This document shows positions 18,712-64,000 of a stretch of DNA of 64,000 nucleotides, piece after piece; the first letter of the stretch is position 1, and the number at the start of each line of letters is the position of its first letter. The stretch is taken from the IMG/VR virus record IMGVR_UViG_3300009703_004110, positions 124,001 through 188,000 of that record; one strand, given 5' to 3'. The translations under genes were made by a program, and so were the position numbers. A model generated the notes under the pieces. That model was not told the origin of the DNA. It was given only the letters and a program-made list of their open reading frames with translations, and ran no database searches.

Positions 18712-21700
18712 TAATCGAATCCTCCAATTCCTTCTACAGTTGTTGTTTCAACCACATAAGATATATACGCAACATGCTCTTTAAAAGAAGATACGGCCTG
18801 GCGATTAAATTTAATATAAAAATATTTATAATCAGAACCAGATATAGATAAGCCAGATAAATCAACTACATTAAATCCAAGCGCACCATTAGGGTGTATA
18901 CCGATAGTCATTGGATTTGCAGAAGAGCTGGCTTCAGAAGATTGCGTGAGATCTAAATCTTCTGAAAATATTTCATAATCGTGATTTCCAAACTCACCAG
19001 ATCCAGCTATTATTTCTGAATAAAAATGGATCGCCAGTTGAGTCAGCGTTTGTCCGTTTAAAATATCAGGAAGGCGCATCTGAACAAAGTCAGTAGTGTT
19101 AGTTCCATCCAGCAGAATAGTCTTGACCTCTCTACTTCCGTTATTAAATGTACTAAAGGCTGATCCAGGTGTCGGCTCGCCCATAGCCACGTCAGGCAGC
19201 TGATCGACGTGCGCGTATTTGATAGCATTCCTAGCAGTATTATACTTATAAAGATCTGCCTTTATAAAGTCAGTCGACTCAACAAATCCGCCAATATACT
19301 GATTACTTTCTGTTCTAGCACTAATACCATCTATACTTTGAACTAATGTTGGCGCAGTTGCAGAATCTGAAACCTCATGATTGTCTGCAATATAGTTACC
19401 ATAAACTTCTATATTGGATCCATCATTAGCATCATCAAAGCTCACAACATTATTATGTAATAAATAACCAGTGTCATTAGAGTAAAGTACATTATTACTA
19501 AATCTAAAATTTTGAATTCTACTAGCTGTTGTGAATATGACATATGAATCTATAAACTTACAATTATCAATAACGATGTTACCTTTATTTGTGGTTTTAT
19601 CATCAAGTTCAGTAATCGACACACCTCTTCTGCCAATCAGATCATCAAGATTGACAGTGGTAAATGCCGCATCAAAATCGAAAGTAACATTTTTAATCTC
19701 TACTCCAAAGGTAAATGGCGTTCCAGTATCGTCTTCGACATTTAAATCGACACAAGATACCCTACAATTATCCATTCTAAAATCTGAAAGCTTAATAAAT
19801 CCAGAACTAAAAGTACTATTTGGTGCAGTTATTGTTGCAAATTTATCACCAGGTATAAATATAATCCCTCTAAATGAAGCAACTTGATCGGAAAAAGTAT
19901 ATTCTGTTCTTATCTTCAGAATAGTTCCATCGCCTTCTCCAGTGATTGTGACCGGAAAATCGATAAGAAGCCCTTGATCATATACTGCCGTATAAAGACT
20001 GTCATATATTACATCCGGGTCCGCGACAAAATCAGTCTCCCACTCATCATAGGTCCTGGTAGATTCATCCTTTTTAACGGTAACTTCGTGTGTACCAGAC
20101 TTCAGATGAATAGTTGGTGTGCCAGCCAACGGGAACATATCAGAAAATCTTTCTGCATATTTAAGAGCCTGCGTTACACTGTCGAAGTGTGCAAGTCTAT
20201 AGTCTGGAGATACTGTAATAGAATTTAACAGAGTTAGATCTAAATCGCTAATAAACAATCTAAGATCGTAAACTCGAACAGTAGTTTGATCGTATTCAAC
20301 TGTAGCTAAAATCACAGAATCATCATCAGCAAATGGATTATCACAAGTACTTGCCTCTGCCGGTTCAGCTAAAATCTCACCTTCGGAGTTGATTGCAACA
20401 TAAAACTTATCTACTGTGGCCGATTCTATATCCGTTTCAATTGTAACAGTAGATGGTATTTCAAACCTTCTTCCACGAACATAGCAAGTTCCTGATCCAA
20501 CAGTTATGCTATACAACCCATCGTTGATTACAGGGGAGGTAACCTGTAGTCCATATGTTACACCATCACTCCTAAGTTCATTGATCGGCCTTTCCGTACC
20601 TTTATGTATAGCATCCGTTCTTAGATCATCCCATCCAACAGACCCTCTCTGAACAGGAGAAAATACCCTTGGGTTGTCTGGATCGACGCCACCAACTATT
20701 CTACCTCTATAATTTCCAAACGGTACTCGTCCAAGCATCAAAACGGAATCTTCATTAATGCCGTCAAAGGCATATACTGTGGTAGTTATGGTTCCATTGG
20801 CAACAATTTTAGATAGCAGAGTTGCCGCATTTGGAATATAAACTCTCAACCTTCTATTGTCTGTACCTGATTCAATCCATATATATGAGTCGCTTCCGAT
20901 GGCCCTCTGTTTAGTTCCGCCATCTAGAGAAATATTAACTATACTGTTAATATCTTCTATAGTTAAAGTTAGCGTCTCATCCTTGGCAAACGGCCCTTCG
21001 TAATCTGAAATAGAGATAAGAGCATCAATGCCAGAAATTTCTACACCATATTCGAGCCTCTTATTCGAAAACAAGTTTTGATTCTCATCTATAAAAACTT
21101 CCATCATTGTTGCGCCGATCGAGCCGGCGACAGCATCAAAGACAGTATCGTCCAGGTTTATAATATTTTCATAGATTTCAAATACCGCATCATCACCTGG
21201 CGAACCAGCGAATCCGCTCGGTATTTGATCGGTATCGATCACAAGTGACGTAGAGGTCACATCTGAAATTACAAAGCTTCCATCATCTGTACCTTCTTCC
21301 GCACCAGATATGGTAATTAGATCACCATTCTTAATACCAGCTTTCAAAAAATCGACTGATGCACTTCCTATAGTGATTGATGTTGTTCCCGCAAAATATG
21401 ATAGACCAGTAGTATTTAATTTTTCTCTTAGACCAGAGAGTGGCAACCCTTTTATAAAATAAAGTGAACCAACTTCTGCAGAGATATCCAAGTCTTTAAG
21501 ATGAGACAGCCCCGCTGTTGTAAGTGCACCATCGCTACCTTCTCCGATCATCAGGGTCCTCTGATTATCAGTAGTGTCTGGTAAATTATGAACAATAGCG
21601 AACTCAACTCCGCCATCACGAAGCTCTAATCTGTAAGCCAAGAACTTAAAATTGCCTTCAACCGCCTGCTCATTGATTTTCTTTACAATGGAATCAACAG

Positions 21701-28853: not shown

Positions 28854-29312
28854 TTACTTTTTACGATGAGCGGCACACAAAGTGCCCTTTTTCGGAGCTT
28901 GACGTTTACATCGCTGACCATTAGTCTTTACAAATAAACATCTTTTAAACTCAGGAGGCGCCTTAACCTCTTCATAATCTTCCATTACAACCGGATTAAA
29001 CTTTGGTTCAGACTCTTCCTCCATCACTATAAATCCATGAGATTCGTCCTTTTTCTCTGTAATGTTTGTAACATCACCTGAGGTAGTAGTACCATAAATT
29101 GCGGCGCGCCTCTCCTGCTCGTTGGAGGCCTCTAACTCATCTAAATCTTTTTGAAACTCAAAGAAGCTTTCATACGCCACATCATATTCATCTGCATCAT
29201 CTGGAACATGGTGCTCTCCACGTCGTCCAATATCATGAGGAGATGGGGCTTTACGAATTGGCGTACCTTTAATTAGATGACTTCTTTTCTTCAGCTTGCT
29301 CTTTAGCATCAT
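28854..29312 (-). CDS. Hypothetical protein with C-terminal C3H Zn-finger
   Basis: RCLFVKTNGQRCKRQAPKKGTLCAAH. Start moved to 29312, which follows a GAGGAGG RBS. Confidence 0.6.
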   Translation of the reverse strand: MMLKSKLKKRSHLIKGTPIRKAPSPHDIGRRGEHHVPDDADEYDVAYESFFEFQKDLDELEASNEQERRAAIYGTTTSGDVTNITEKKDESHGFIVMEEESEPKFNPVVMEDYEEVKAPPEFKRCLFVKTNGQRCKRQAPKKGTLCAAHRKK

Positions 29313-29922
29313 CTTCCTCCTCAAAATACCTTGACAGAATCTCTTCTAAGGCGTCATGGATCTCATCCTCTAAATCCTCTGCCTCTTCTTTGTCTAGCTC
29401 TAGATCGAATGGCAGGTTTACCCTTGCGCCGACTTCATTATCCTTTATGAAGATATTAAAATGAGGGTCCGGAGTTTTGCACTCAGTATCTTCGTCATTA
29501 GTAGTGTGAAGAACTTCCTTCATCTGTTCGGCCATGTCATGAACCCTGTCAGATGCGTCGGGAAGCTCTAAAAGTTTAAGAGCAATCGCGAGTTTGGTAA
29601 GGTCACTAAAGAGAGAAGACTTCTTTTTCTTCTTCTTCTTCTTCTTTTTATCTTTCCACTTGACCTTCTTTTCCCACTTCTTAACTTTCTTTTTTGTTTC
29701 CTCTTTGTCAGTGGAAACGTGAGATTCTTCTAGATTTTTGTTTTGGTTCAATACGCCCCATGCCTTTGCATAAGCTCTCGCATCGCTTTCGCCAGCATCC
29801 TTAGCGCCCTCAAAGACAGCCATAAATTGGCGGTACTCTTTGGCGCCAGCACCTGGATGACGCTTCTTGACTTTCTTTTTAATATCAGCAGGAACTGATT
29901 TTTTCTTTGCCGTAATCAGCAT
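29269..29922 (-). CDS. ChaB-like protein with poly-Lys tract and acidic C-terminus
   Basis: VPADIKKKV...RQFMAVFEGAKDAGESDARAYAKAWGVL matches the ChaB pattern. A run of ten Lys follows. Confidence 0.6.
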   Translation of the reverse strand: MLITAKKKSVPADIKKKVKKRHPGAGAKEYRQFMAVFEGAKDAGESDARAYAKAWGVLNQNKNLEESHVSTDKEETKKKVKKWEKKVKWKDKKKKKKKKKKSSLFSDLTKLAIALKLLELPDASDRVHDMAEQMKEVLHTTNDEDTECKTPDPHFNIFIKDNEVGARVNLPFDLELDKEEAEDLEDEIHDALEEILSRYFEEEDDAKEQAEEKKSSN

Positions 29923-30201: not shown

Positions 30202-30570
30202 TTAGTTGGTTATATTCATCTTCGATATGCCTTTTGGATTCATAACGCCTATGCCAATTTTTTCAGTTACAGACCATGAAAGTCCCGTCCTTGGTAATAA
30301 AGCAGGAAAAGAATCAAAGTTATATACGCACCATTCCTTTAAAACATCTGGAAGATCATCAAATATCTCCTCCAGAGGGCATGGTGTTGATGTGGCAATA
30401 AGCTTTCCATTACGAATACTTTTCTGCTGTTTAATTTTATAACAATTAACTTTATAATCATATATTCCATAGTATACGAATTCAAATTCGCCATTAGAAA
30501 ATTTACCACTACTAACTTCTTTAAAGCCAGCAGCTTTCAATATTCTTTCAAATTCATTACAGTCTTCCAT
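30202..30570 (-). CDS. Array protein with shared motif (DLPDVLKEWCVYNFDSF) and C-terminal extension
   Basis: Variant of the shared motif; TAATG-coupled to the upstream gene. Confidence 0.65.
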   Translation of the reverse strand: MEDCNEFERILKAAGFKEVSSGKFSNGEFEFVYYGIYDYKVNCYKIKQQKSIRNGKLIATSTPCPLEEIFDDLPDVLKEWCVYNFDSFPALLPRTGLSWSVTEKIGIGVMNPKGISKMNITN

Positions 30571-30953
30571 TAGGCAAACCTCAATCTTTCGTATTCTGCT
30601 TTCTCTGTGGCATTAGCACGTTTTGCCTCAGCAGCATTAACAAGTCTTTTACGTTCTCTAGCAAGGTCCTGCATGTTAAATAATGTTGTATCTCTTATTT
30701 CATATACAGTTAATTGGTCATATGCGTGTTCGTTATAACTCTCAGGTAAGTGTCCGGCATATTTGCTATCCCAATACATTTCCTCATAATCGTCATCATT
30801 ATAGTCAAGATCGTTAACAAATAAAAGTTCTTTTTTAATTCTTGCAACAAGCTCCTCCATCGAATCAGCATATTCTGTCCAGGTTTTTACTCCGCAGCCA
30901 ATAGTGTAATCACATCCGCTGCCTTGCTCGGCTATAACTAAAAAGGTCTTCAT
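30570..30953 (-). CDS. Hypothetical protein in the array, no shared motif
   Basis: 127 aa; contains EQGSGCDYTIGCG. Confidence 0.65.
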   Translation of the reverse strand: MKTFLVIAEQGSGCDYTIGCGVKTWTEYADSMEELVARIKKELLFVNDLDYNDDDYEEMYWDSKYAGHLPESYNEHAYDQLTVYEIRDTTLFNMQDLARERKRLVNAAEAKRANATEKAEYERLRFA

Positions 30954-31240
30954 AATCTTATCTCTCCTTTACTTGTAGATACAAACATATCTAGATTACA
31001 TAATACAAATATCGCCTGATCTCTTCCAAGTTCCATTAGAAAATCATCAAGCTCAGTCTCTCCTATATCCTTAGGGTCAAGTCTACGTCGTTTATAAACC
31101 AATAGTTTATACCCATCGCTTACCATTTTTGGAACAAATCGCCACTTAAACTTATCTTTTCCAAGCTCTCGAAACAGCTCATCTTTAAAGCCTTGGCATT
31201 CAAATAAGGTCATTAAATGGCTCCATATCATTATGGTCAA
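30950..31240 (-). CDS. Array protein with shared motif (ELGRDQAIFVLCNLDMF)
   Basis: Motif near the C-terminus; start uncertain. Confidence 0.6.
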   Translation of the reverse strand: MTIMIWSHLMTLFECQGFKDELFRELGKDKFKWRFVPKMVSDGYKLLVYKRRRLDPKDIGETELDDFLMELGRDQAIFVLCNLDMFVSTSKGEIRL

Positions 31241-31448
31241 ACATATCTAAATTATTAATCAAAATATCTTTAATCGAAACTGATAAATAATCATCATTTA
31301 ACATAGCTTCCAATAACATCTTGGTACTATTTGGGCTAGACCAGCATATTATTTGAACCTTGCTACCTATTTGCCCCATAAACATTTTTCGTCTAGCCAG
31401 GTAATCGTCTAATCCAAGCTTATTCATTTCTGATATTATTTTCATCAA
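31200..31448 (-). CDS. Array protein with shared motif (YLSVSIKDILINNLDMF)
   Basis: Motif near the C-terminus. Confidence 0.6.
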   Translation of the reverse strand: MMKIISEMNKLGLDDYLARRKMFMGQIGSKVQIICWSSPNSTKMLLEAMLNDDYLSVSIKDILINNLDMFDHNDMEPFNDLI

Positions 31449-31816
31449 AATAACTCCGCATTATAAATAATAAAGTCTTGCAACTCTATGGGTAAATCAT
31501 CAATAATCTGGTCAGTGCTTTGATAAATATAGTTACTATCTTTTGGATTCCATCTTGAAAATACGATTGTTTCATCTCTGTGCATAGAGACGCGCAACTC
31601 TTTTTTAAGCTCTGAGTCAGATACATCCAAACGAAAATCTTCAAAGTACTGAAGAGATTTAAAACCGCTTGATATAACTAAGGACCTAAATCTTGCAAAT
31701 TTATCAAACGGCAGTTTATAGCCATTAGAAATAATTAGATTAAGACTAACATAGTCGAGTCTAAAACCTAAGTCTATAGTGCACAAGGAATTATTTAATC
31801 CTCTAATTTTCTTCAT
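31445..31816 (-). CDS. Array protein with shared motif (DLPIELQDFIIYNAELF)
   Basis: Motif at the extreme C-terminus. Confidence 0.7.
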   Translation of the reverse strand: MKKIRGLNNSLCTIDLGFRLDYVSLNLIISNGYKLPFDKFARFRSLVISSGFKSLQYFEDFRLDVSDSELKKELRVSMHRDETIVFSRWNPKDSNYIYQSTDQIIDDLPIELQDFIIYNAELF

Positions 31817-32039
31817 AAATCTCGCGCTCTAATACATCGTTAATTAAAAGCTCAAGAGGACGCCTTATATACTCAGGCGGCTGTATTCTGGGCGATTGAT
31901 CGCTAGCCCGTATAAATTGGGTCTTACGCATAGAATCTAAACGACATTGCTTAGAGCAGTATGCTAGAGAGCACTCAGTCTTTTTTATATATATAAATGC
32001 TTTGCAGCAATGGGTACACATGGTTTTATGGGTTTTCAT
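31803..32039 (-). CDS. Small Zn-finger protein in the array, no shared motif
   Basis: CTHC...YCSKQC. Confidence 0.6.
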   Translation of the reverse strand: MKTHKTMCTHCCKAFIYIKKTECSLAYCSKQCRLDSMRKTQFIRASDQSPRIQPPEYIRRPLELLINDVLEREIYEEN

Positions 32040-32239
32040 ATAAACAGCTCCATATTGTGAATCATATAATTTTGAAACCTTTTTGGTATTCCAGGAAATT
32101 CCAGAATCTTTTCAGCAGAGATCGGATTAAATACATCCGAAATTAAAGACACAAAAATAATCTTTTTTTTGCCATCGACTCTCGCCATTGATATAAAATT
32201 TAGACTCAGCCATTCCGAAAATTCTTCTTCAATATTCAT
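32036..32239 (-). CDS. Array protein with shared motif (GIPKRFQNYMIHNMELFI)
   Basis: Motif at the C-terminus; ATGA overlaps on both sides. Confidence 0.7.
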   Translation of the reverse strand: MNIEEEFSEWLSLNFISMARVDGKKKIIFVSLISDVFNPISAEKILEFPGIPKRFQNYMIHNMELFI

Positions 32240-32532
32240 ATAAATAACCCTATATTATGAATGATGAGATCTTGAACATCAGGCGGAAACTCATTCATAT
32301 GTTCTGACACCTTTCTTAACTCATAATTAAGATAACCATCTATATTATTAGGATCTCTAATTTTATCTATTGATTCGTATACATATAATTTTTCCATACG
32401 AACAGAATAAACGATGCGCATTCTTAAGCCATCATTAAAAAATGCATGATTATGTCGATAGGTCTTTTGTACAAATCCTATCGAATTTAATATTCTTATT
32501 ATAGACGGAGGCACGGCATTTCCATAATTCAT
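32236..32532 (-). CDS. Array protein with shared motif (EFPPDVQDLIIHNIGLFI)
   Basis: Motif at the C-terminus; ATGA overlaps on both sides. Confidence 0.7.
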   Translation of the reverse strand: MNYGNAVPPSIIRILNSIGFVQKTYRHNHAFFNDGLRMRIVYSVRMEKLYVYESIDKIRDPNNIDGYLNYELRKVSEHMNEFPPDVQDLIIHNIGLFI

Positions 32533-32834
32533 ATAAATAACTCCGCATTATAAATCACAAACTCTTGGACCTCTTCTGGCAAAAAAGCAAATAGGTCTCC
32601 GACGCTTTTACCCGGATAAGATTTCACAAATCCGCTACAATCAAGCTTTCCAAATGTAAGCTTAACATGATCGCCGCGCTCACGGAAAGATATTCTAATC
32701 TCCTTTTTAAAGGTATAGTCGTATCTGCTTCCAGAACGTGAACTTATTTCAAATCCTGAGCACATCATGACGCTGTGAAATTCATAAGCGGGAATAGTGG
32801 CGAGAATGTATTCTCCCGGGTATCTTCCTTTCAT
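32529..32834 (-). CDS. Array protein with shared motif (FLPEEVQEFVIYNAELFI)
   Basis: Motif at the C-terminus; ATGA overlaps. Confidence 0.7.
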   Translation of the reverse strand: MKGRYPGEYILATIPAYEFHSVMMCSGFEISSRSGSRYDYTFKKEIRISFRERGDHVKLTFGKLDCSGFVKSYPGKSVGDLFAFLPEEVQEFVIYNAELFI

Positions 32835-33081
32835 ATAAGTAAATCCATATTATGAATCAAAGCATCCTTTACATATTGTGGGAAACGATTGCTTTCAAGG
32901 GCCTCTGATATATATCCCAAGTATAAACATATCTATATCCCGCCTCATCATCGCGACGCTCCTGTATATAGGTGCTTATAAAAAAATCGTCTACATCATT
33001 GCGACCACTATATATGACCATATTATTTTCTTTTAGATATTCACTTATTTCTGGTATATCGATATAATCTCTGACACTCAT
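32831..33081 (-). pseudogene. Frameshifted array gene; motif RFPQYVKDALIHNMDLLI lies in the shifted frame
   Basis: Removing one AT from (AT)4 at 32908-32915 gives ...WDISEALESNRFPQYVKDALIHNMDLLI*, whose stop overlaps the next ATG (ATGA). Confidence 0.7.
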
Positions 33082-33159
33082 AAATTCCGCCTGCCTATCT
33101 AGGCTTTTCTATACAGTACCTGCGCGAACGATGGTGTGCAAATCTAGGAATGGAAAGAT

Positions 33160-33414
33160 TTACACAAACAGTTCCAAATTATGGATAATATAATCCTGGA
33201 TGGTTAACTCAAGATCGTTTAGTTTATCACCTATATCATAAAGAATATACTCCATTCTATCATTGTTCCAGATCCCATAATACCATTTTTTATAAGGATG
33301 ATTGCTCCAGTAATCACATATAATTTTTTCATCGCCATAACAATAGCATCCCTTTTGTCTGGATACAAAACCGCGCTTCTCTAGAAGATCGAAGAATTCA
33401 TTATATTCAATCAT
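33160..33414 (-). CDS. Array protein with shared motif (DLELTIQDYIIHNLELFV)
   Basis: Motif at the C-terminus. Confidence 0.7.
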   Translation of the reverse strand: MIEYNEFFDLLEKRGFVSRQKGCYCYGDEKIICDYWSNHPYKKWYYGIWNNDRMEYILYDIGDKLNDLELTIQDYIIHNLELFV

Positions 33415-33650
33415 ACAAACAACTCCATATTATATATGATATAATCTTTAACTTCTATAGGAAATTGATTAGAATTTAATACATAAGTTATAGAATGCCA
33501 CTCAATATGTTTTCCAGGCCTTTTAATCCCAATAGAATATTTACCATCTTCATCTGCAAAGCTGCTAGTTGCCAAACTACAGTCATACTGTCCAATGAAA
33601 TGACTTATAATTGCATAATAATTATTTGTATTATCATCAGGTATTGACAT
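33411..33650 (-). CDS. Array protein with shared motif (QFPIEVKDYIIYNMELFV)
   Basis: Motif at the C-terminus. Confidence 0.7.
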   Translation of the reverse strand: MSIPDDNTNNYYAIISHFIGQYDCSLATSSFADEDGKYSIGIKRPGKHIEWHSITYVLNSNQFPIEVKDYIIYNMELFV

Positions 33651-33839
33651 TTATTGGCCCTTTATTCTAATAAATAGATCCAAGTTATAAATAATAAAGC
33701 TGCGCGCAGGATCCGGAAGGTCTTCGCATTCTAAGAGTGCTTCGGCAGACCACCAGACTTTCTCGCAATCATCACTCTAAGTAACGTACTCCCATAAGTC
33801 CATATATCCATACACTTCTGTTAACTTTGGTTTATTCAT
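33651..33839 (-). pseudogene. Array gene with in-frame TAG at codon 21 (motif DLPDPARSFIIYNLDLFI)
   Basis: Reads MNKPKLTEVYGYMDLWEYVT*SDDCEKVWWSAEALLECEDLPDPARSFIIYNLDLFIRIKGQ*. TAATG-coupled to the HNH gene. Confidence 0.65.
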
Positions 33840-34708
33840 TACCAGTTATCCTTATTGGCGAGCATTTTTTCTAAATGAGACTTGAGAAAGCAGGCATCGT
33901 GAGCCATCTTTACTCTATTACATACTTCACAACAAGATACTACATTGTCAAGGCTATAGCCTTTGCTAGAGTCAACTCTGTCCACCCCAAGAGTTTCTAT
34001 CTTGTCCCCGCAATAATTACAAGGCTTCTGCCAAAAAGTAGAAAACTGTTCGTCAGTTAGATTCCAAGCAAATCCTCTTTTCTTTGCATTAAACTTATAT
34101 TTAGATAGCTTACCTGCGAGAGTGGCGTTATGTATTTTAGCATAGGCACGCTCCTGCTTTCTGGCTTTTTCTAGATTTTCACTTCGCCACTTATTCTTTG
34201 CAACTCTTCTCTTTTCGCGATATACCTCATCATCTTTATATTTTTCCTTGTGCCATTTGGCCTTGCAGGGTTTGCAAACTACTCCAAATCCATCATCCCT
34301 TGACTTATCCTTATAAAAGTCATCAACTGATAACGTTAGCTTACAATGCGAGCATCGTTTTTCTATTTTATCTGAAAATATACCACTTGCTGCATTTTTC
34401 TTTCTCTTTTTAATACGACAAAGTTTGCACACATTCTCCCTACCATCCGCAAGAAGCTTTGATTTATTAAAGCTATCCATAGGTAATAATTCCGAACAAG
34501 CTTTGCAGGTCTTTTCTATTCTATCTATATCATATTTAATTCTTGGAACCGGCACTCTTTTGGCATTTTTTACTTTACTAGTACAGGTTCTGCACCTATT
34601 AGAATATCCATCTTTAGTTGCCTTATTTAAACTATATGCCTCATATGGCATAGGATCTTTACAGTAGTTACAAGTCTTCATCCCTCCTCCATACATATAT
34701 TTTACCAT
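33839..34708 (-). CDS. HNH-type homing endonuclease-like protein with three N-terminal CxxC Zn-finger repeats
   Basis: KTCNYC...CRTC, KTCKAC...CKLC, KRCSHC...CKPC, then PCNYCG...GVDRVDSSKGYSLDNVVSCCEVCNRVK. The start may be 34681. Confidence 0.75.
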   Translation of the reverse strand: MVKYMYGGGMKTCNYCKDPMPYEAYSLNKATKDGYSNRCRTCTSKVKNAKRVPVPRIKYDIDRIEKTCKACSELLPMDSFNKSKLLADGRENVCKLCRIKKRKKNAASGIFSDKIEKRCSHCKLTLSVDDFYKDKSRDDGFGVVCKPCKAKWHKEKYKDDEVYREKRRVAKNKWRSENLEKARKQERAYAKIHNATLAGKLSKYKFNAKKRGFAWNLTDEQFSTFWQKPCNYCGDKIETLGVDRVDSSKGYSLDNVVSCCEVCNRVKMAHDACFLKSHLEKMLANKDNW

Positions 34709-34866: not shown

Positions 34867-35880
34867 TTAGTCAGTGACAAAGCCACTGCCGACACCTCGG
34901 GGGTTTACAATCCCAATTCCGATTATTTCGCTGACTACCCAGCCAAGCTTCAACTGCTTAGGCTCGTCAGCAGGCAGTACCTCGATGTCCTGACGGACAG
35001 GCATTACACCTACGAACTCTGGATCCGCTACTGCGAAGACCTGCTTGTTAGTAACAACCTTGGAGACGATGATATCAGCACCGAAGATTGAACCATAAAG
35101 TCCAGTCTGTAGTAGTTCACGCTGAGTCACAGGATCGACCTGAGACGCACCACCGGCACCAGCAGACTCCCAATTAAGGATGTCAGTGAATTCATTGATG
35201 TGCATGAAGTACTTAGCAGTCACGAGGTCCCAACGATCGACCTGACGCTTTAGGTTTAGAAGACCGACCTTAGCCAGTTCATCAGTGGTAGTACCGTTGT
35301 CCAATGTCTGCAACTGGTTCTCACCACCTGCGTTGTTGTCACCGGCGAAATCAAGAGCGGCGAATACGTTAGCATCCTCCTGCGCCTGGATTTCCTGACG
35401 GGCCTTTTGCTGAGCACGATCGATTACATTGAATCTACGCCTCTTGACTTCAGCAATACGGACGGTTGGGTTTGAAACTACTTCAAACTCTGGGATGGTT
35501 ACTCTGTCACCGAAGACACGGGACTCAGGCGCGGTACCATTGCTAGATATAACAACAGCTCCTACGTCGATATCACGGTCGTAGACAGGTAGAGCACCTT
35601 GTGGAAGTGGATCGACTACGAGAGCCTTTCTACCTACACCTTGGTAATCAAGGTTCCTACGAATAGGATTAGCCATAGCTTGACCGAGGGCAGTCTTACC
35701 TTCTTGAGTCATAAGAGCCTGCTTGATCATTTCGTCTCTCTGCTCTTCATTTAATGAAGAACCCTGAGATAGAGCTGAGCTAGAAGGTGCCAATTCTTCA
35801 ATGATGGAAGCGTATCTAACAATCTGCGCTAGAGCATCTTTTACGTTGCCGGCGTTTAATTCGCCTTGTGTATTAAACAT
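34867..35880 (-). CDS. Major capsid protein (HK97 fold, compact encapsulin-like type)
   Basis: PIRRNLDYQGVGRKALVVDPLP, FEVVSNPTVRIAEV, AQEDANVF, GLYGSIFGADIIVS, IGIGIVNPRGV. Follows scaffold and decoration genes and ends at a strong terminator. Confidence 0.85.
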   Translation of the reverse strand: MFNTQGELNAGNVKDALAQIVRYASIIEELAPSSSALSQGSSLNEEQRDEMIKQALMTQEGKTALGQAMANPIRRNLDYQGVGRKALVVDPLPQGALPVYDRDIDVGAVVISSNGTAPESRVFGDRVTIPEFEVVSNPTVRIAEVKRRRFNVIDRAQQKARQEIQAQEDANVFAALDFAGDNNAGGENQLQTLDNGTTTDELAKVGLLNLKRQVDRWDLVTAKYFMHINEFTDILNWESAGAGGASQVDPVTQRELLQTGLYGSIFGADIIVSKVVTNKQVFAVADPEFVGVMPVRQDIEVLPADEPKQLKLGWVVSEIIGIGIVNPRGVGSGFVTD

Positions 35881-62488: not shown

Positions 62489-63661
62489 TCATTCAAACGG
62501 ATCAGCCGGGATTTCAATCTCTGGATCTTCTTCCGTATATTCCGCTTGGATATTTTCACCAAGATAATAAGACCTGATCTCCTGGTCGAACCTATCCAAA
62601 TTATCTCGGATGGCCTCCAGCACCGTGGCCCTACTTGAATATTTTACGCCGTCGATCAAATAAGTTCTTGCACTTGGTCTTTCCCAGTACCCAATAGCGT
62701 TACCAACATCAAGAAGTTCTTCTTCTTTACGGACAATACCTTCGAGATATTTAATGGTATATTCGCATTGTGCATACGAAGTAGAGACCTTATTCTTCAG
62801 GACTTTAGCTCTAACTCTATGTCCAATCCTGACGTCATTAGAGTCTTTAATGATATTATCTGCGCCGCCCATAGGTGCGAAATTTATCATAAGGCTGCAA
62901 GCGTGCTTAAGAGCACGGCCGCCAGGAGAATCCTCAGGGTTTCCAAACATTTGACCGGGGTTGACACGTAACTGGTTAATCAGAATAACCGCTGTATTTG
63001 ATTGCGCCGCCCCAGGGGTGATTTTTCGTAGCTCTACGGAAAGGAATCTCGCCATTAAAGCCATGTTCTGCTTACCAACATCAGAAGTTCTTTCCATTGG
63101 TGGTTGCATTGCCGCTATAGAATCCAAGATAACAAGTCCGCATCGTCCAAGATTTAGACGATTCATCTTAGTCCCATCTGGATGTGGGTAATCCATAACA
63201 ATACCATCTTTAATCATATCAAAGATGCCCTTGATTTTAGTTTCTTTCTTAGTCTGCTTATTTACCTTCGTCTTTCCAACTAATCCGCCGAATAGCTTTT
63301 CGGCTTGATTGCTTTTTACTAAGAAGATTCTATCATTATCAATTCCAAATTTCTCAGCCCATGATGCAGAGTAAGTATATTCTGCATCTAGGAAAACAAA
63401 ACAATTTTCCGGATGTAAAGACTGCCAATAAGCCGCACTCTGTAAAGCTGTAAAGGTCTTTCCGGATGCTTCCTTTCCAGCATATTGTGTTACTCGTCCC
63501 CTTACCGGTCCGCCGCCAGTCGCGAAATCTAAGCCGGGGCTACCTGTACTGATAGTTTCAATATTATTGCTGATTGCCTTTGGGTGCACAATTGCGTCGT
63601 TACCGAATAGACTTTCGGCCTGCTTAAAAGCCTCACTTGGTGATAGTAGTTCTTTTGCCAT
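62489..63661 (-). CDS. recA: RecA/UvsX-like recombinase
   Basis: ISTGSPGLDFATGGG, GKEASGKT, FLDAEY, ILDS, INQLR, PGGRALKH, KNKV. Start refined to MAKELL (AAGGAG RBS). Confidence 0.92.
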   Translation of the reverse strand: MAKELLSPSEAFKQAESLFGNDAIVHPKAISNNIETISTGSPGLDFATGGGPVRGRVTQYAGKEASGKTFTALQSAAYWQSLHPENCFVFLDAEYTYSASWAEKFGIDNDRIFLVKSNQAEKLFGGLVGKTKVNKQTKKETKIKGIFDMIKDGIVMDYPHPDGTKMNRLNLGRCGLVILDSIAAMQPPMERTSDVGKQNMALMARFLSVELRKITPGAAQSNTAVILINQLRVNPGQMFGNPEDSPGGRALKHACSLMINFAPMGGADNIIKDSNDVRIGHRVRAKVLKNKVSTSYAQCEYTIKYLEGIVRKEEELLDVGNAIGYWERPSARTYLIDGVKYSSRATVLEAIRDNLDRFDQEIRSYYLGENIQAEYTEEDPEIEIPADPFE

Positions 63662-63674
63662 CTTGATATACTCC

Positions 63675-64000
63675 TTAATATTTGTGATTGTAGCCTGTAT
63701 CAGAAGGCAGACGATATCCGGCTGGTGGGCTCCATCCAACAGGATCTTCTGGTCTTTCTGCTACTGCGGCTTCTGTTCTAATTAACAAATTGGCTATACT
63801 TGTTGCATTAATAAGGGCTGTTTTAGTAACTTTCTTAGGGTCTATTACACCCATTTCAACTAAGTCACCGTACAGGCCCTCTGCTACATTATACCCGAAA
63901 TTTGGGTTAGCATCAGGGAGTATTTTGTTCAAAACTTCTTCTACATCTTCATCCGCATTCTTCAATATTTGAGCAATAGGTCTAACGCATGCGCCTAATA
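63675..64000 (-). CDS. groL: Chaperonin GroEL C-terminal part, 5'-truncated by the window edge
   Basis: ACVRPIAQILKNA...GYNVAEGLYGDLVEMGVIDPKKVTKTALINATSIANLLIRTEAAV. Confidence 0.9.
   Translation of the reverse strand, partial: LGACVRPIAQILKNADEDVEEVLNKILPDANPNFGYNVAEGLYGDLVEMGVIDPKKVTKTALINATSIANLLIRTEAAVAERPEDPVGWSPPAGYRLPSDTGYNHKY

What the first reader, a model, noticed from the sequence alone, without database searches (positions are those of the whole stretch)
31445..33430. Motif codons double as the RBS and start of the next gene: plug-and-play cassettes
Seen: in four copies the x-E codons create GGAG exactly 8 nt before the next ATG (AAT ATG GAG TTG TTT GTA TGA; AAT GCG GAG TTA TTT ATA TGA; AAT ATG GAG CTG TTT ATA TGA; AAT GCG GAG TTA TTT TGA TG). 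The final codon plus stop supplies that ATG. The copy at 33160, which is not coupled to a downstream gene, has GGAA and TAA instead. Two copies share an identical 21-mer, AAATAACTCCGCATTATAAAT (31448-31468 and 32535-32555). Inference: each unit ends in a homologous junction that re-initiates translation, so recombination between junctions (the phage encodes RecA) could add, delete or shuffle units without breaking expression.
Basis: partly seen in the sequence, partly recalled or inferred. Interest (0 to 1): 0.75.

Follow-up and report, generated by a model that had tools for sequence, protein, structure and literature searches.

The report
Coupled array of small phage paralogs
A jumbo phage carries a head-to-tail row of eleven small related genes of unknown function; the conserved last codons of several copies also spell the ribosome-binding site and start of the next gene, which is ordinary translational coupling and not shown to be a recombination cassette.

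Summary
On the minus strand, 30202-33839 holds 11 paralogous small genes, two of them broken, plus two unrelated ORFs, packed by ATGA/TGATG overlaps. Four junctions read GGAG-8 nt-ATG, the uncoupled copy has GGAA and TAA, and the 21-mer occurs twice.

The shared motif is a protein feature. It is the end of a ~28-residue C-terminal two-helix module (…LPxxhQ[DE]hhIhNh[DE]LFh) of an unannotated phage family. The genome has ~25 copies, and other metagenomic phages carry tandem arrays, with different codons and mostly Asp where this array often has Glu.

The module ends one residue before the stop. Its x-[D/E] codons therefore lie 8 nt before an overlapped ATG, inside this phage's Shine-Dalgarno window (GGAG peaks 5-8 nt upstream). 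Across 41 members from 10 contigs, GGA occupies that spot in 15/17 coupled versus 8/24 uncoupled copies (p=6e-4), and GGAG in 6/17 versus 0/24. The RBS reading is supported, as ordinary intragenic-SD coupling.

The plug-and-play recombination idea is not supported here:
- Only one pair shares more than 15 nt.
- Codon identity in the motif is the same within and between genomes.
- The paralogs are old (14-38% identity).
- No close relatives or raw reads exist to map breakpoints.

Protein function is unknown.

The parts
33839..34708 (-). HNH / endonuclease VII-like gene between the major head gene and the array. Its stop overlaps the ATG of copy a (TAATG).
   Evidence: PHROG 1035 endonuclease VII, E=1.9e-38; junction read
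33651..33839 (-). Copy a: family member with an in-frame TAG at 33777-33779. The module reads …FIIYNLDLF followed by a 6-residue tail. The next ATG follows the TAA directly.
33411..33650 (-). Copy b (79 aa), ending …IIYNMELFV. GGAG at 33423-33426 lies 8 nt before the ATG of c (ATGA overlap).
33160..33414 (-). Copy c (84 aa), ending …IIHNLELFV with GGAA and TAA. It is followed by a 78-nt gap and is not coupled.
   Evidence: nearest relatives are outside the genome (L088 and L003 members)
32831..33081 (-). Copy d: frameshifted member. The start frame stops at 32869, and the module …LIHNMDLLI is in the -1 frame, so the shift lies between 32872 and 32932 near a TATATAT run. In the module's frame its ATA TGA end is ATGA-coupled to e, with GGAT in place of GGAG.
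32529..32834 (-). Copy e (101 aa), ending …VIYNAELFI. GGAG at 32541-32544 lies 8 nt before the ATG of f. It carries the 21-mer (32535-32555).
   Evidence: AlphaFold2 model, pLDDT 76.5
32236..32532 (-). Copy f (98 aa), ending …IIHNIGLFI. AGGG lies 8 nt before the ATG of g (ATGA overlap).
32036..32239 (-). Copy g (67 aa), ending …MIHNMELFI. GGAG at 32048-32051 lies 8 nt before the ATG of h.
31803..32039 (-). ORF h (78 aa), Cys-rich, without the module. It is an unrelated gene inside the array and overlaps i by 14 nt.
31445..31816 (-). Copy i (123 aa), ending …IIYNAELF. GGAG at 31454-31457 lies 8 nt before the ATG of j (TGATG overlap). It carries the 21-mer (31448-31468).
31200..31445 (-). Copy j (81 aa). 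The module …LINNLDMF is followed by a 12-residue tail (DHNDMEPFNDLI). The ME codons of that tail give GGAG (31221-31224) 7 nt before the ATG of k.
30950..31213 (-). Copy k (87 aa). The module …VLCNLDMFV is followed by a 9-residue tail that holds AAAGGAGAG, the SD for l (ATGA overlap).
   Evidence: P0009; ortholog in L118/L119
30570..30953 (-). ORF l (127 aa), without the module and with no family hit.
30202..30570 (-). Copy m (122 aa). The module (…CVYNFDSF) is internal and is followed by a ~35-residue tail similar to the last 40 residues of the major head protein.
   Evidence: 38% identity over 40 aa, E=6e-7; orthologs P0015 and P0022
34867..35880 (-). Major head protein gene, the conserved anchor upstream of the variable region that holds the array.
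   Evidence: PHROG 2522, E=2e-73; 391 relatives in IMG/VR

Best explanation
The region is a late-module operon of 11 paralogous small genes (67-123 aa), two of them broken and two unrelated ORFs interspersed. They belong to an unannotated jumbo-phage protein family. The family is defined by a ~28-residue C-terminal two-helix module, S-h-E-E-h-h-D-x-LP-x-x-h-[QK]-[DE]-h-h-I-[YHF]-N-h-[DE]-L-F-h. This module is conserved for the protein's sake. The genes are packed stop-on-start (ATGA, TGATG), so ribosomes finishing one gene re-initiate on the next, helped by a Shine-Dalgarno sequence that has to lie inside the upstream gene. Because the module ends one residue before the stop, its x-[D/E] codons always sit 8 nt before the overlapped ATG. 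In coupled copies these codons have been chosen to spell GGAG or at least GGA: Met, Ala-GCG or Leu-NTG at x, then Glu-GAG or Asp-GAT. In uncoupled copies they are not. Shown: the anatomy, protein-level conservation of the motif, the phage's SD preference, and the association between codon choice and coupling. Inferred: that coupling actually operates and that selection for the SD shaped the codons. The array itself is an old expansion in a hypervariable slot downstream of the head gene. Homologous recombination at the motif is possible in principle but is not evidenced here.
For: The motif behaves as a protein motif:
- The Leu codon is TTG, TTA, CTG or CTA, the last residue is ATA, GTA or GTG, and D and E interchange.
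- The module is found in about 25 ORFs of this genome, including uncoupled ones.
- It is found in arrays in unrelated metagenomic phage contigs with other codons and mostly Asp: L122 has at least 11 copies, L120 five, L119 five, L124 three.
- It is also attached to a different, Imm5-like N-terminal domain in the 335-kb relative.

AlphaFold2 places the motif in a C-terminal helix of one compact alpha/beta domain.

SD use in this genome: GGAG peaks 5-8 nt before ATG, 124 of 381 crude genes have it, and 40 of 354 same-strand pairs overlap by ATGA.

Codon choice versus coupling over 41 members from 10 contigs:
- GGA in 15/17 copies with a start 7-11 nt downstream, against 8/24 without (p=6e-4).
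- GGAG in 6/17 against 0/24 (p=0.003).
- A G-ending Leu codon in 5/6 against 4/14 (p=0.05).
- GAG in 6/6 against 1/3.
- Genome background is GAG 40% and GCG 14%.

The terminal codon that builds the ATGA differs between lineages (ATA, GTA, AAA, CGA, CCA). The overlap has therefore been re-invented rather than inherited as one DNA junction. Intragenic SDs in overlapping pairs are general in prokaryotes and usually raise re-initiation (PMC6728339).
Against: - Starts are predicted, not measured.
- The SD is only 4 nt.
- Two coupled junctions (d, f) lack GGAG.
- The family members are related, so the Fisher tests overstate independence.
- The purely synonymous tests are marginal (p=0.05 and 0.08).
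- The host, and hence its anti-SD, is unknown.
- The e-i 21-mer is somewhat longer than codon pools predict (permutation P=0.035).
- Two neighbours in L121 share a 36-nt identical 3' end on otherwise unalignable genes, so some DNA-level exchange at the module does occur in this family.
Confidence: 0.75

Rival explanations
1. One reading: the conserved junction DNA is a portable linker. Recombination between junctions, by the phage RecA or by short-homology recombination, adds, deletes or shuffles whole units while keeping frame and translational coupling. The array would then be an actively shuffled cassette system, comparable to T4 PeSL cassettes.
For: - Six junctions form a ~56-nt direct-repeat family at 65-80% identity.
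- The e-i pair shares an exact 21-mer (permutation P=0.035).
- L121 neighbours share a 36-nt identical 3' end.
- Copy number at this slot differs among relatives: 1 in L003, 1-2 in L088, at least 5 in L119, 11 here.
- One metagenomic protein (P0024) is two units fused in one frame.
- Copy j carries a second, degenerate motif after the first.
- A RecA homolog is present at window 62489-63739.
- T4 recombines at microhomologies of 2-10 bp (PMC9391042) and at PeSLs (PMC2839356).
Against: - All pairs other than e-i share at most 15 nt, mostly at the chance level of codon-shuffled controls.
- Codon identity at identical residues of the motif is 0.54 within this genome and 0.55 between genomes, so there is no homogenisation.
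- Paralogs are 14-38% identical, and none is a recent duplicate. Copies c, k and m are closer to genes of other phages than to any array neighbour, and they keep their relative order.
- Three independent assemblies of the L122-type array are collinear, although 99.98-100% identical and so weakly informative.
- No joints appear in the contigs of the two runs that hold the sequence.
- No promoter or terminator cassette is present at the junctions.
Confidence: 0.15
2. The conserved C-terminal module is a shared handle on variable N-terminal binder domains. It would be a docking or targeting signal, for example for loading into the head for co-injection or for a common partner. The array would be a diversified repertoire of host-takeover or anti-defence proteins, and the SD overlap would be incidental.
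For: - The same module sits on unrelated N-terminal parts, including Imm5-like domains in the 335-kb relative (below the Pfam cut-off).
- The array lies directly downstream of the head protein gene.
- Member m and its orthologs end in a copy of the head protein's C-terminal ~40 residues.
- There are many copies per genome, and three are broken, suggesting birth-and-death turnover.
- T4 internal proteins offer a precedent for a common targeting sequence on variable proteins (PMC3012670, listed; details from my own knowledge).
Against: - No experimental or homology evidence for any partner exists.
- AlphaFold2 puts the module inside a single compact domain rather than on a free tail.
- Other arrays of the family lie far from the head genes.
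- There is no Pfam, PHROG, PDB or fold match.
Confidence: 0.15
3. The C-terminal N-h-[DE]-L-F is a sliding-clamp binding peptide of the QL[SD]LF type, and the proteins target the host replisome.
For: The only support is resemblance of NLELF, NLDMF and NLDLF at the extreme C-terminus to QL[SD]LF. This is recalled from my own knowledge, not from a tool.
Against: - Position 1 is N, H or E, never Q.
- The peptide is predicted as part of a helix in a folded domain.
- The conserved block is 28 residues, not 5.
- No clamp gene was found in the phage.
- The host is unknown.
Confidence: 0.03

Closest known systems
Translational coupling by termination-reinitiation at ATGA/TGATG overlaps with an intragenic Shine-Dalgarno (Huber et al. 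2019, PMC6728339; review PMC12548453)
   Same: Co-directional genes overlap by 4 or 1 nt. The SD of the downstream gene lies inside the 3' end of the upstream gene at normal spacing. This is widespread and usually raises re-initiation.
   Different: Here the SD falls in the most conserved residues of a repeated protein module. The same dual-use arrangement therefore recurs down a paralog array and in other phages. Coupling itself was not measured.
PeSL mobile regulatory cassettes of T4-type phages (Arbiol et al. 2010, PMC2839356; Comeau et al. 2014, PMC4122927)
   Same: Repeated conserved sequence lies between small accessory genes in hyperplastic regions, and was proposed to let units be gained or lost without breaking expression.
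   Different: PeSLs are ~100-bp intergenic promoter plus stem-loop terminator elements, with demonstrated crossovers and mini-circles. Here the repeat is coding sequence, 65-80% identical, with no promoter or terminator signal and no observed crossover.
Microhomology-mediated tandem amplification in T4 (tifA; Srikant et al. 2022, PMC9391042)
   Same: Tandem gene arrays in a large lytic phage arise by recombination at very short homologies under selection from host defence.
   Different: Those amplifications are recent, made of identical units, and use any 6-10 bp microhomology. The present copies are ancient and diverged.
T4 internal proteins with a common capsid targeting sequence (PMC3012670, listed; details from my own knowledge)
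   Same: A short conserved segment is shared by otherwise variable small proteins encoded near head genes.
   Different: The T4 signal is N-terminal and is cleaved by the prohead protease. Here the conserved part is a C-terminal helix pair, and packaging is untested.

Membership tests
Translationally coupled overlapping gene pairs with intragenic SD | Co-directional genes whose stop and start overlap (ATGA, TGATG or TAATG) | tested here: met
   ATGA at b/c, d/e, e/f, f/g, g/h and k/l. One-base overlaps at HNH/a (TAATG), i/j (TGATG) and l/m.
Translationally coupled overlapping gene pairs with intragenic SD | SD-like sequence in the upstream gene at functional spacing | tested here: met
   GGAG at 8 nt in b, e, g and i, with weaker AGGG in f and GGAT in d. 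The genome-wide GGAG optimum is 5-8 nt.
Translationally coupled overlapping gene pairs with intragenic SD | Downstream translation depends on upstream translation | not testable with these tools
   Needs reporters or ribosome profiling. No RNA run holds the sequence.
PeSL-type mobile regulatory cassettes | Conserved intergenic promoter plus stem-loop terminator flanking each unit | tested here: not met
   Promoter-like and terminator-like sites are at the level of shuffled controls (26 against 21.4±4.3; 3 against 3.2). None sits at the junctions, which are coding sequence.
PeSL-type mobile regulatory cassettes | Indels between close relatives, or mini-circles, have breakpoints in the repeat | not testable with these tools
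   No relatives at 90% identity or more. The nearest relatives differ across the whole region. Only contigs are available, not reads.
Beta-clamp binding motif QL[SD]LF | Gln at position 1 of a flexible pentapeptide | tested here: not met
   Position 1 is N, H or E in all members, and the peptide is predicted helical.
HicA toxin (PF07927) | Pfam match over the gathering score | tested here: not met
   One of 33 members matches, at E=0.018. No HicA structure appears among the fold matches.
Any annotated protein family (Pfam, PHROGs, PDB) | Significant profile or fold match | tested here: not met
   No hits. The best Foldseek match has E=0.017 and TM 0.47. The best VIA Z score is 6.6, within the tool's stated noise.

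The most novel reading that the evidence does not exclude
The ~28-residue C-terminal module is a common handle for a large, fast-turning repertoire of small binder proteins in jumbo phages, some with Imm5-like immunity domains. The handle would serve head loading or docking to one partner. Its coding DNA, which also carries the SD and start of the next gene, would be the place where unequal recombination can add or remove units and still leave every gene in frame and translated. That would make a protein-coding counterpart of T4 PeSL cassettes.
Probability: 0.1. Interest if true: 0.75.

Novelty: new member of a known kind. Interest (0 to 1): 0.3.

Why it matters

Two things are worth keeping. 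First, it is a clean natural example of dual coding: the most conserved residues of a protein module also act as the ribosome-binding site, and codon choice tracks whether a downstream gene is coupled. Second, it exposes an unannotated multigene family. This genome has about 25 copies. Tandem arrays of up to 11 or more occur in other uncultured large phages, and the module is also fused to Imm5-like domains. The family probably belongs to the variable, host-interaction part of jumbo-phage genomes and is a candidate for functional work.

Tried and rejected
- Pfam and PHROGs on all array proteins gave nothing.
- A PDB profile search gave nothing.
- Foldseek against PDB and VIA-align wide on the model of e gave only generic alpha+beta matches (TM<0.5, Z<=6.6). 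The viral fold library was unavailable.
- ESM Atlas gave no lead.
- A second AlphaFold2 run on c with 47 sequences was worse (pLDDT 67).
- blastn against GenBank phages hit only the head gene of Bacillus phage G.
- The search for related loci with the family alignment failed because no stretch was conserved enough.
- A degenerate DNA pattern for IIxNM[DE]LF in IMG/VR returned mostly chance matches.
- Read-level variants could not be examined. Only Logan contigs of two subsurface metagenome runs hold the sequence, and they show no joints.
- Searches for closer relatives of e and m found only the proteins themselves, and all nine proteins checked are singleton clusters.
- Three contigs with the L122-type array proved to be the same strain.
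- TAG recoding of the whole genome was rejected, because coding coverage is 0.9256 with TAG read through against 0.9261 with the standard code.
- Rfam gave no hit.
- The clamp-binding and HicA ideas were rejected (see the membership tests).
Full report
**What is there.** The window is part of a 332,270-bp virus record with 39.7% GC. Its major head protein (34867-35880, minus strand) matches PHROG 2522. At DNA level its only match in the GenBank phage collection is the head gene of Bacillus phage G.

Downstream of the head gene on the minus strand lies an HNH / endonuclease VII-like gene (33839-34708). After it comes an uninterrupted chain of small ORFs from 33839 down to 30202. Eleven of them (a-g, i-k, m) end in variants of …LPxxhQ[DE]hhI[YH]Nh[DE]LFh. 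Two others (h, 31803-32039, Cys-rich; l, 30570-30953) lack this ending.

Almost every neighbouring pair is joined stop-on-start:
- HNH/a by TAATG.
- a/b with TAA followed directly by ATG.
- b/c, d/e, e/f, f/g, g/h and k/l by ATGA.
- i/j (TGATG) and l/m by one shared base.
- h/i and j/k by 14-nt overlaps.
- The only real gap is 78 nt between c and d.

**The observation.** All four quoted junctions, the GGAA/TAA end of copy c and the duplicated 21-mer are exactly as described. Four of the five GGAG-N8-ATGA sites in the 64-kb window are these junctions. The constant 8-nt spacing is a consequence of homology. The motif ends one residue before the stop, so Leu (3 nt) + Phe (3 nt) + 2 nt of the last codon separate the [D/E] codon from an ATG built from that codon's last base and the TG of TGA.

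These are coupled in the same way without GGAG.

**The motif is a protein feature.**
- Within the array the Leu codon is TTG, TTA, CTG or CTA. The terminal residue is ATA, GTA or GTG, and Glu alternates with Asp or Gly.
- A profile of the C-terminus finds about 25 ORFs with it in this genome, most outside the array and most uncoupled.
- A profile search of 1.84 billion representative proteins returns only 34 hits. About half are this genome's own, and all hits carry the same C-terminal block.
- The conserved block is ~28 residues: a short acidic helix, LP, then the amphipathic helix that ends in N-h-[DE]-L-F.
- The contigs that encode the foreign hits hold tandem arrays of the family: at least 11 in L122/L139, five in L120, five in L119, three in L124, two in L121. 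One protein (P0024) is two units fused.
- The complete 335-kb relative (the record of L003) has 15 matches. These include arrays of ~195-aa Ala/Tyr-rich proteins with a weak Imm5-like signal (E=3e-4, below the Pfam cut-off) that end in the same module.
- The family consensus is F-N-L-D-L-F, so Glu is a local variant.
- AlphaFold2 models e as one compact domain in the order beta, alpha, five beta strands, alpha, alpha, with the motif in the last helix (pLDDT 76.5). The model of c has the same order of elements but lower confidence.
- Nothing in Pfam, PHROGs, PDB sequences or fold libraries matches above noise.

**Do the motif codons act as the RBS?** In a crude gene set of 381 ORFs, GGAG upstream of ATG peaks sharply at spacings of 5-8 nt, and 124 of the 381 genes have it at 5-10 nt. 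Forty of 354 same-strand pairs overlap by ATGA, and 15 of those 40 have GGAG. The four junctions therefore fit this phage's normal initiation signal.

GAG is 40% of Glu codons and GCG 14% of Ala codons genome-wide, yet every coupled Glu copy uses GAG. The two Ala copies use GCG, though those two are not independent.

I pooled 41 family members from 10 contigs:

| Feature at the x-[D/E] codons | Next ATG 7-11 nt downstream | No such ATG | p |
|---|---|---|---|
| GGA | 15/17 | 8/24 | 6e-4 |
| GGAG | 6/17 | 0/24 | 0.003 |
| Leu codon at x ends in G | 5/6 | 4/14 | 0.05 |
| Glu is GAG | 6/6 | 1/3 | 0.08 |

An independent phage (L088) has the same AAT ATG GAG TTA TTT ATA TGA junction. The closest relative's uncoupled copy has GAT, TAA and its own AGGAG after the stop. 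Members are related, so these tests overstate independence, but the direction is consistent.

The codon that supplies the A of ATGA differs by lineage (ATA, GTA, AAA, CGA, CCA). This points to repeated selection for overlap rather than inheritance of one junction. Intragenic SDs at overlapping pairs are the rule in most prokaryotes, and removing them usually lowers re-initiation (PMC6728339).

**Are the junctions recombination cassettes?** At DNA level the junctions form a ~56-nt repeat family of only 65-80% identity.

Evidence against active shuffling:
- The longest exact word shared by any two units is the e-i 21-mer. The next is 15 nt. Two 14-nt 'matches' are only the physical overlaps of neighbours (h/i, j/k), and the rest are mostly at the level of codon-shuffled controls.
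- Given the amino-acid sequences and the codon pools of each column, a run of 21 nt or more somewhere in the family has P=0.035.
- e and i are also the only pair alignable over most of their length (31% over 86 aa). The 21-mer is best read as residual common ancestry or a single small conversion.
- Codon identity at identical residues of the motif is 0.54 within this genome, 0.57 within L122 and 0.55 between genomes. There is no general homogenisation.
- Paralogs are 14-38% identical. Copies c, k and m have clearer counterparts in other phages than in the array, and in the same relative order. The duplications therefore predate the divergence of these phages.

Evidence for some turnover and exchange:
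- The slot between the head gene and the conserved downstream genes (from 29922 down) is hypervariable. Family copies there number 1 in L003 (together with adenylosuccinate lyase and other genes), 1-2 in L088, at least 5 in L119 and 11 here.
- In L121 two neighbours share a 36-nt identical 3' end on otherwise unalignable genes. Exchange at the module DNA does therefore happen in the family.
- T4 can recombine at microhomologies of 2-10 bp (PMC9391042).

The decisive comparison could not be made:
- All nine array proteins checked are singleton clusters among ~15 billion proteins, and searches for closer homologs of e and m found only the proteins themselves.
- The two runs that hold the sequence are available only as contigs and show no joints.
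- Three assemblies of the L122-type array are the same strain.
- Unlike T4 PeSLs (~100-bp promoter-terminator cassettes with demonstrated crossovers, PMC2839356), the junctions here show no promoter or terminator signal.

The cassette model is therefore unproven and, for this genome, not favoured.

**Function of the proteins.** Function is unknown. The pattern is a variable body with a conserved C-terminal helix pair, many copies per genome, three broken copies, and the module on a different, Imm5-like N-terminal domain in a relative. Member m also has a tail that copies the last ~40 residues of the head protein (38% identity, E=6e-7). Together these features suggest a diversifying set of binder proteins with a shared structural or docking element. 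I rate that as a lead only. The clamp-motif and HicA resemblances failed their tests.

**Verdict.** The RBS and start overlap is real and shows modest evidence of codon-level adaptation. The plug-and-play recombination inference is not supported here and is untestable with present data. The mechanism is known; the protein family is new to annotation.

Noticed in passing
window 33777-33779 (copy a); genome C1:303576-303651 (outside the window): Copy a has a single in-frame TAG, and the genome encodes a tRNA with anticodon CUA among its 25 tRNA genes. Genome-wide TAG read-through does not improve coding coverage (0.9256 against 0.9261), so the standard code holds. Local suppression of this TAG cannot be excluded.
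   Followed up: partly
genome C1:321768-322078 (locus L086): Another family member is split over two frames at a run of seven A (GCA AAA AAA TTG). A -1 shift there joins the N-terminal part to a perfect C-terminal module. This is either a slippery A_AAA_AAA site or a homopolymer indel or pseudogene.
   Followed up: partly
window 32872-32932 (copy d): Copy d is frameshifted (-1) near a TATATAT run. Together with a and the copy at C1:321768, that makes three of about 25 family members broken, which suggests birth-and-death turnover or assembly errors.
   Followed up: partly
window 30202-30310 (tail of m) versus 34867-34990 (end of the head gene): The last ~40 residues of m resemble the C-terminus of the major head protein (38% identity, E=6e-7). 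The same tail is kept in orthologs from other phages (P0015, P0022).
   Followed up: partly
L133:1-1644 and the record of L003 at 412-2807, 19212-20484 and 295982-297158: The 335-kb relative carries tandem arrays of ~195-aa Ala/Tyr/Asn-rich proteins with a weak Imm5-like match. They end in the same C-terminal module and are also joined by AAATGA overlaps.
   Followed up: partly
window 33839-34708: An HNH / endonuclease VII-like gene sits directly between the head gene and the array. The closest relative has a longer (471 aa) version at the same place. It may be a homing endonuclease that could stimulate local recombination.
   Followed up: no
window 29269-29922, especially 29613-29658: A conserved 217-aa protein contains a run of 11 Lys encoded by a long A-rich homopolymer-like tract. 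The assembler's contigs break exactly there.
   Followed up: no
genome C1:258605-331451: There are 25 tRNA genes in the last quarter of the genome, and several out-of-array family members lie next to them (for example at 258900, 314238 and 317737).
   Followed up: no
window 31200-31240 (tail of j): After its module (…NNLDMF), copy j has a second, degenerate motif-like stretch (HNDMEPF). The ME codons of that stretch give the GGAG for k. This may be a remnant of a junction duplication.
   Followed up: no
whole record: IMG/VR classes the 332-kb record as a provirus, and the same proteins are on record from a 420,521-bp contig. The source is a subsurface metagenome. A second sample holds two 151-nt pieces identical to the array.
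   Followed up: no
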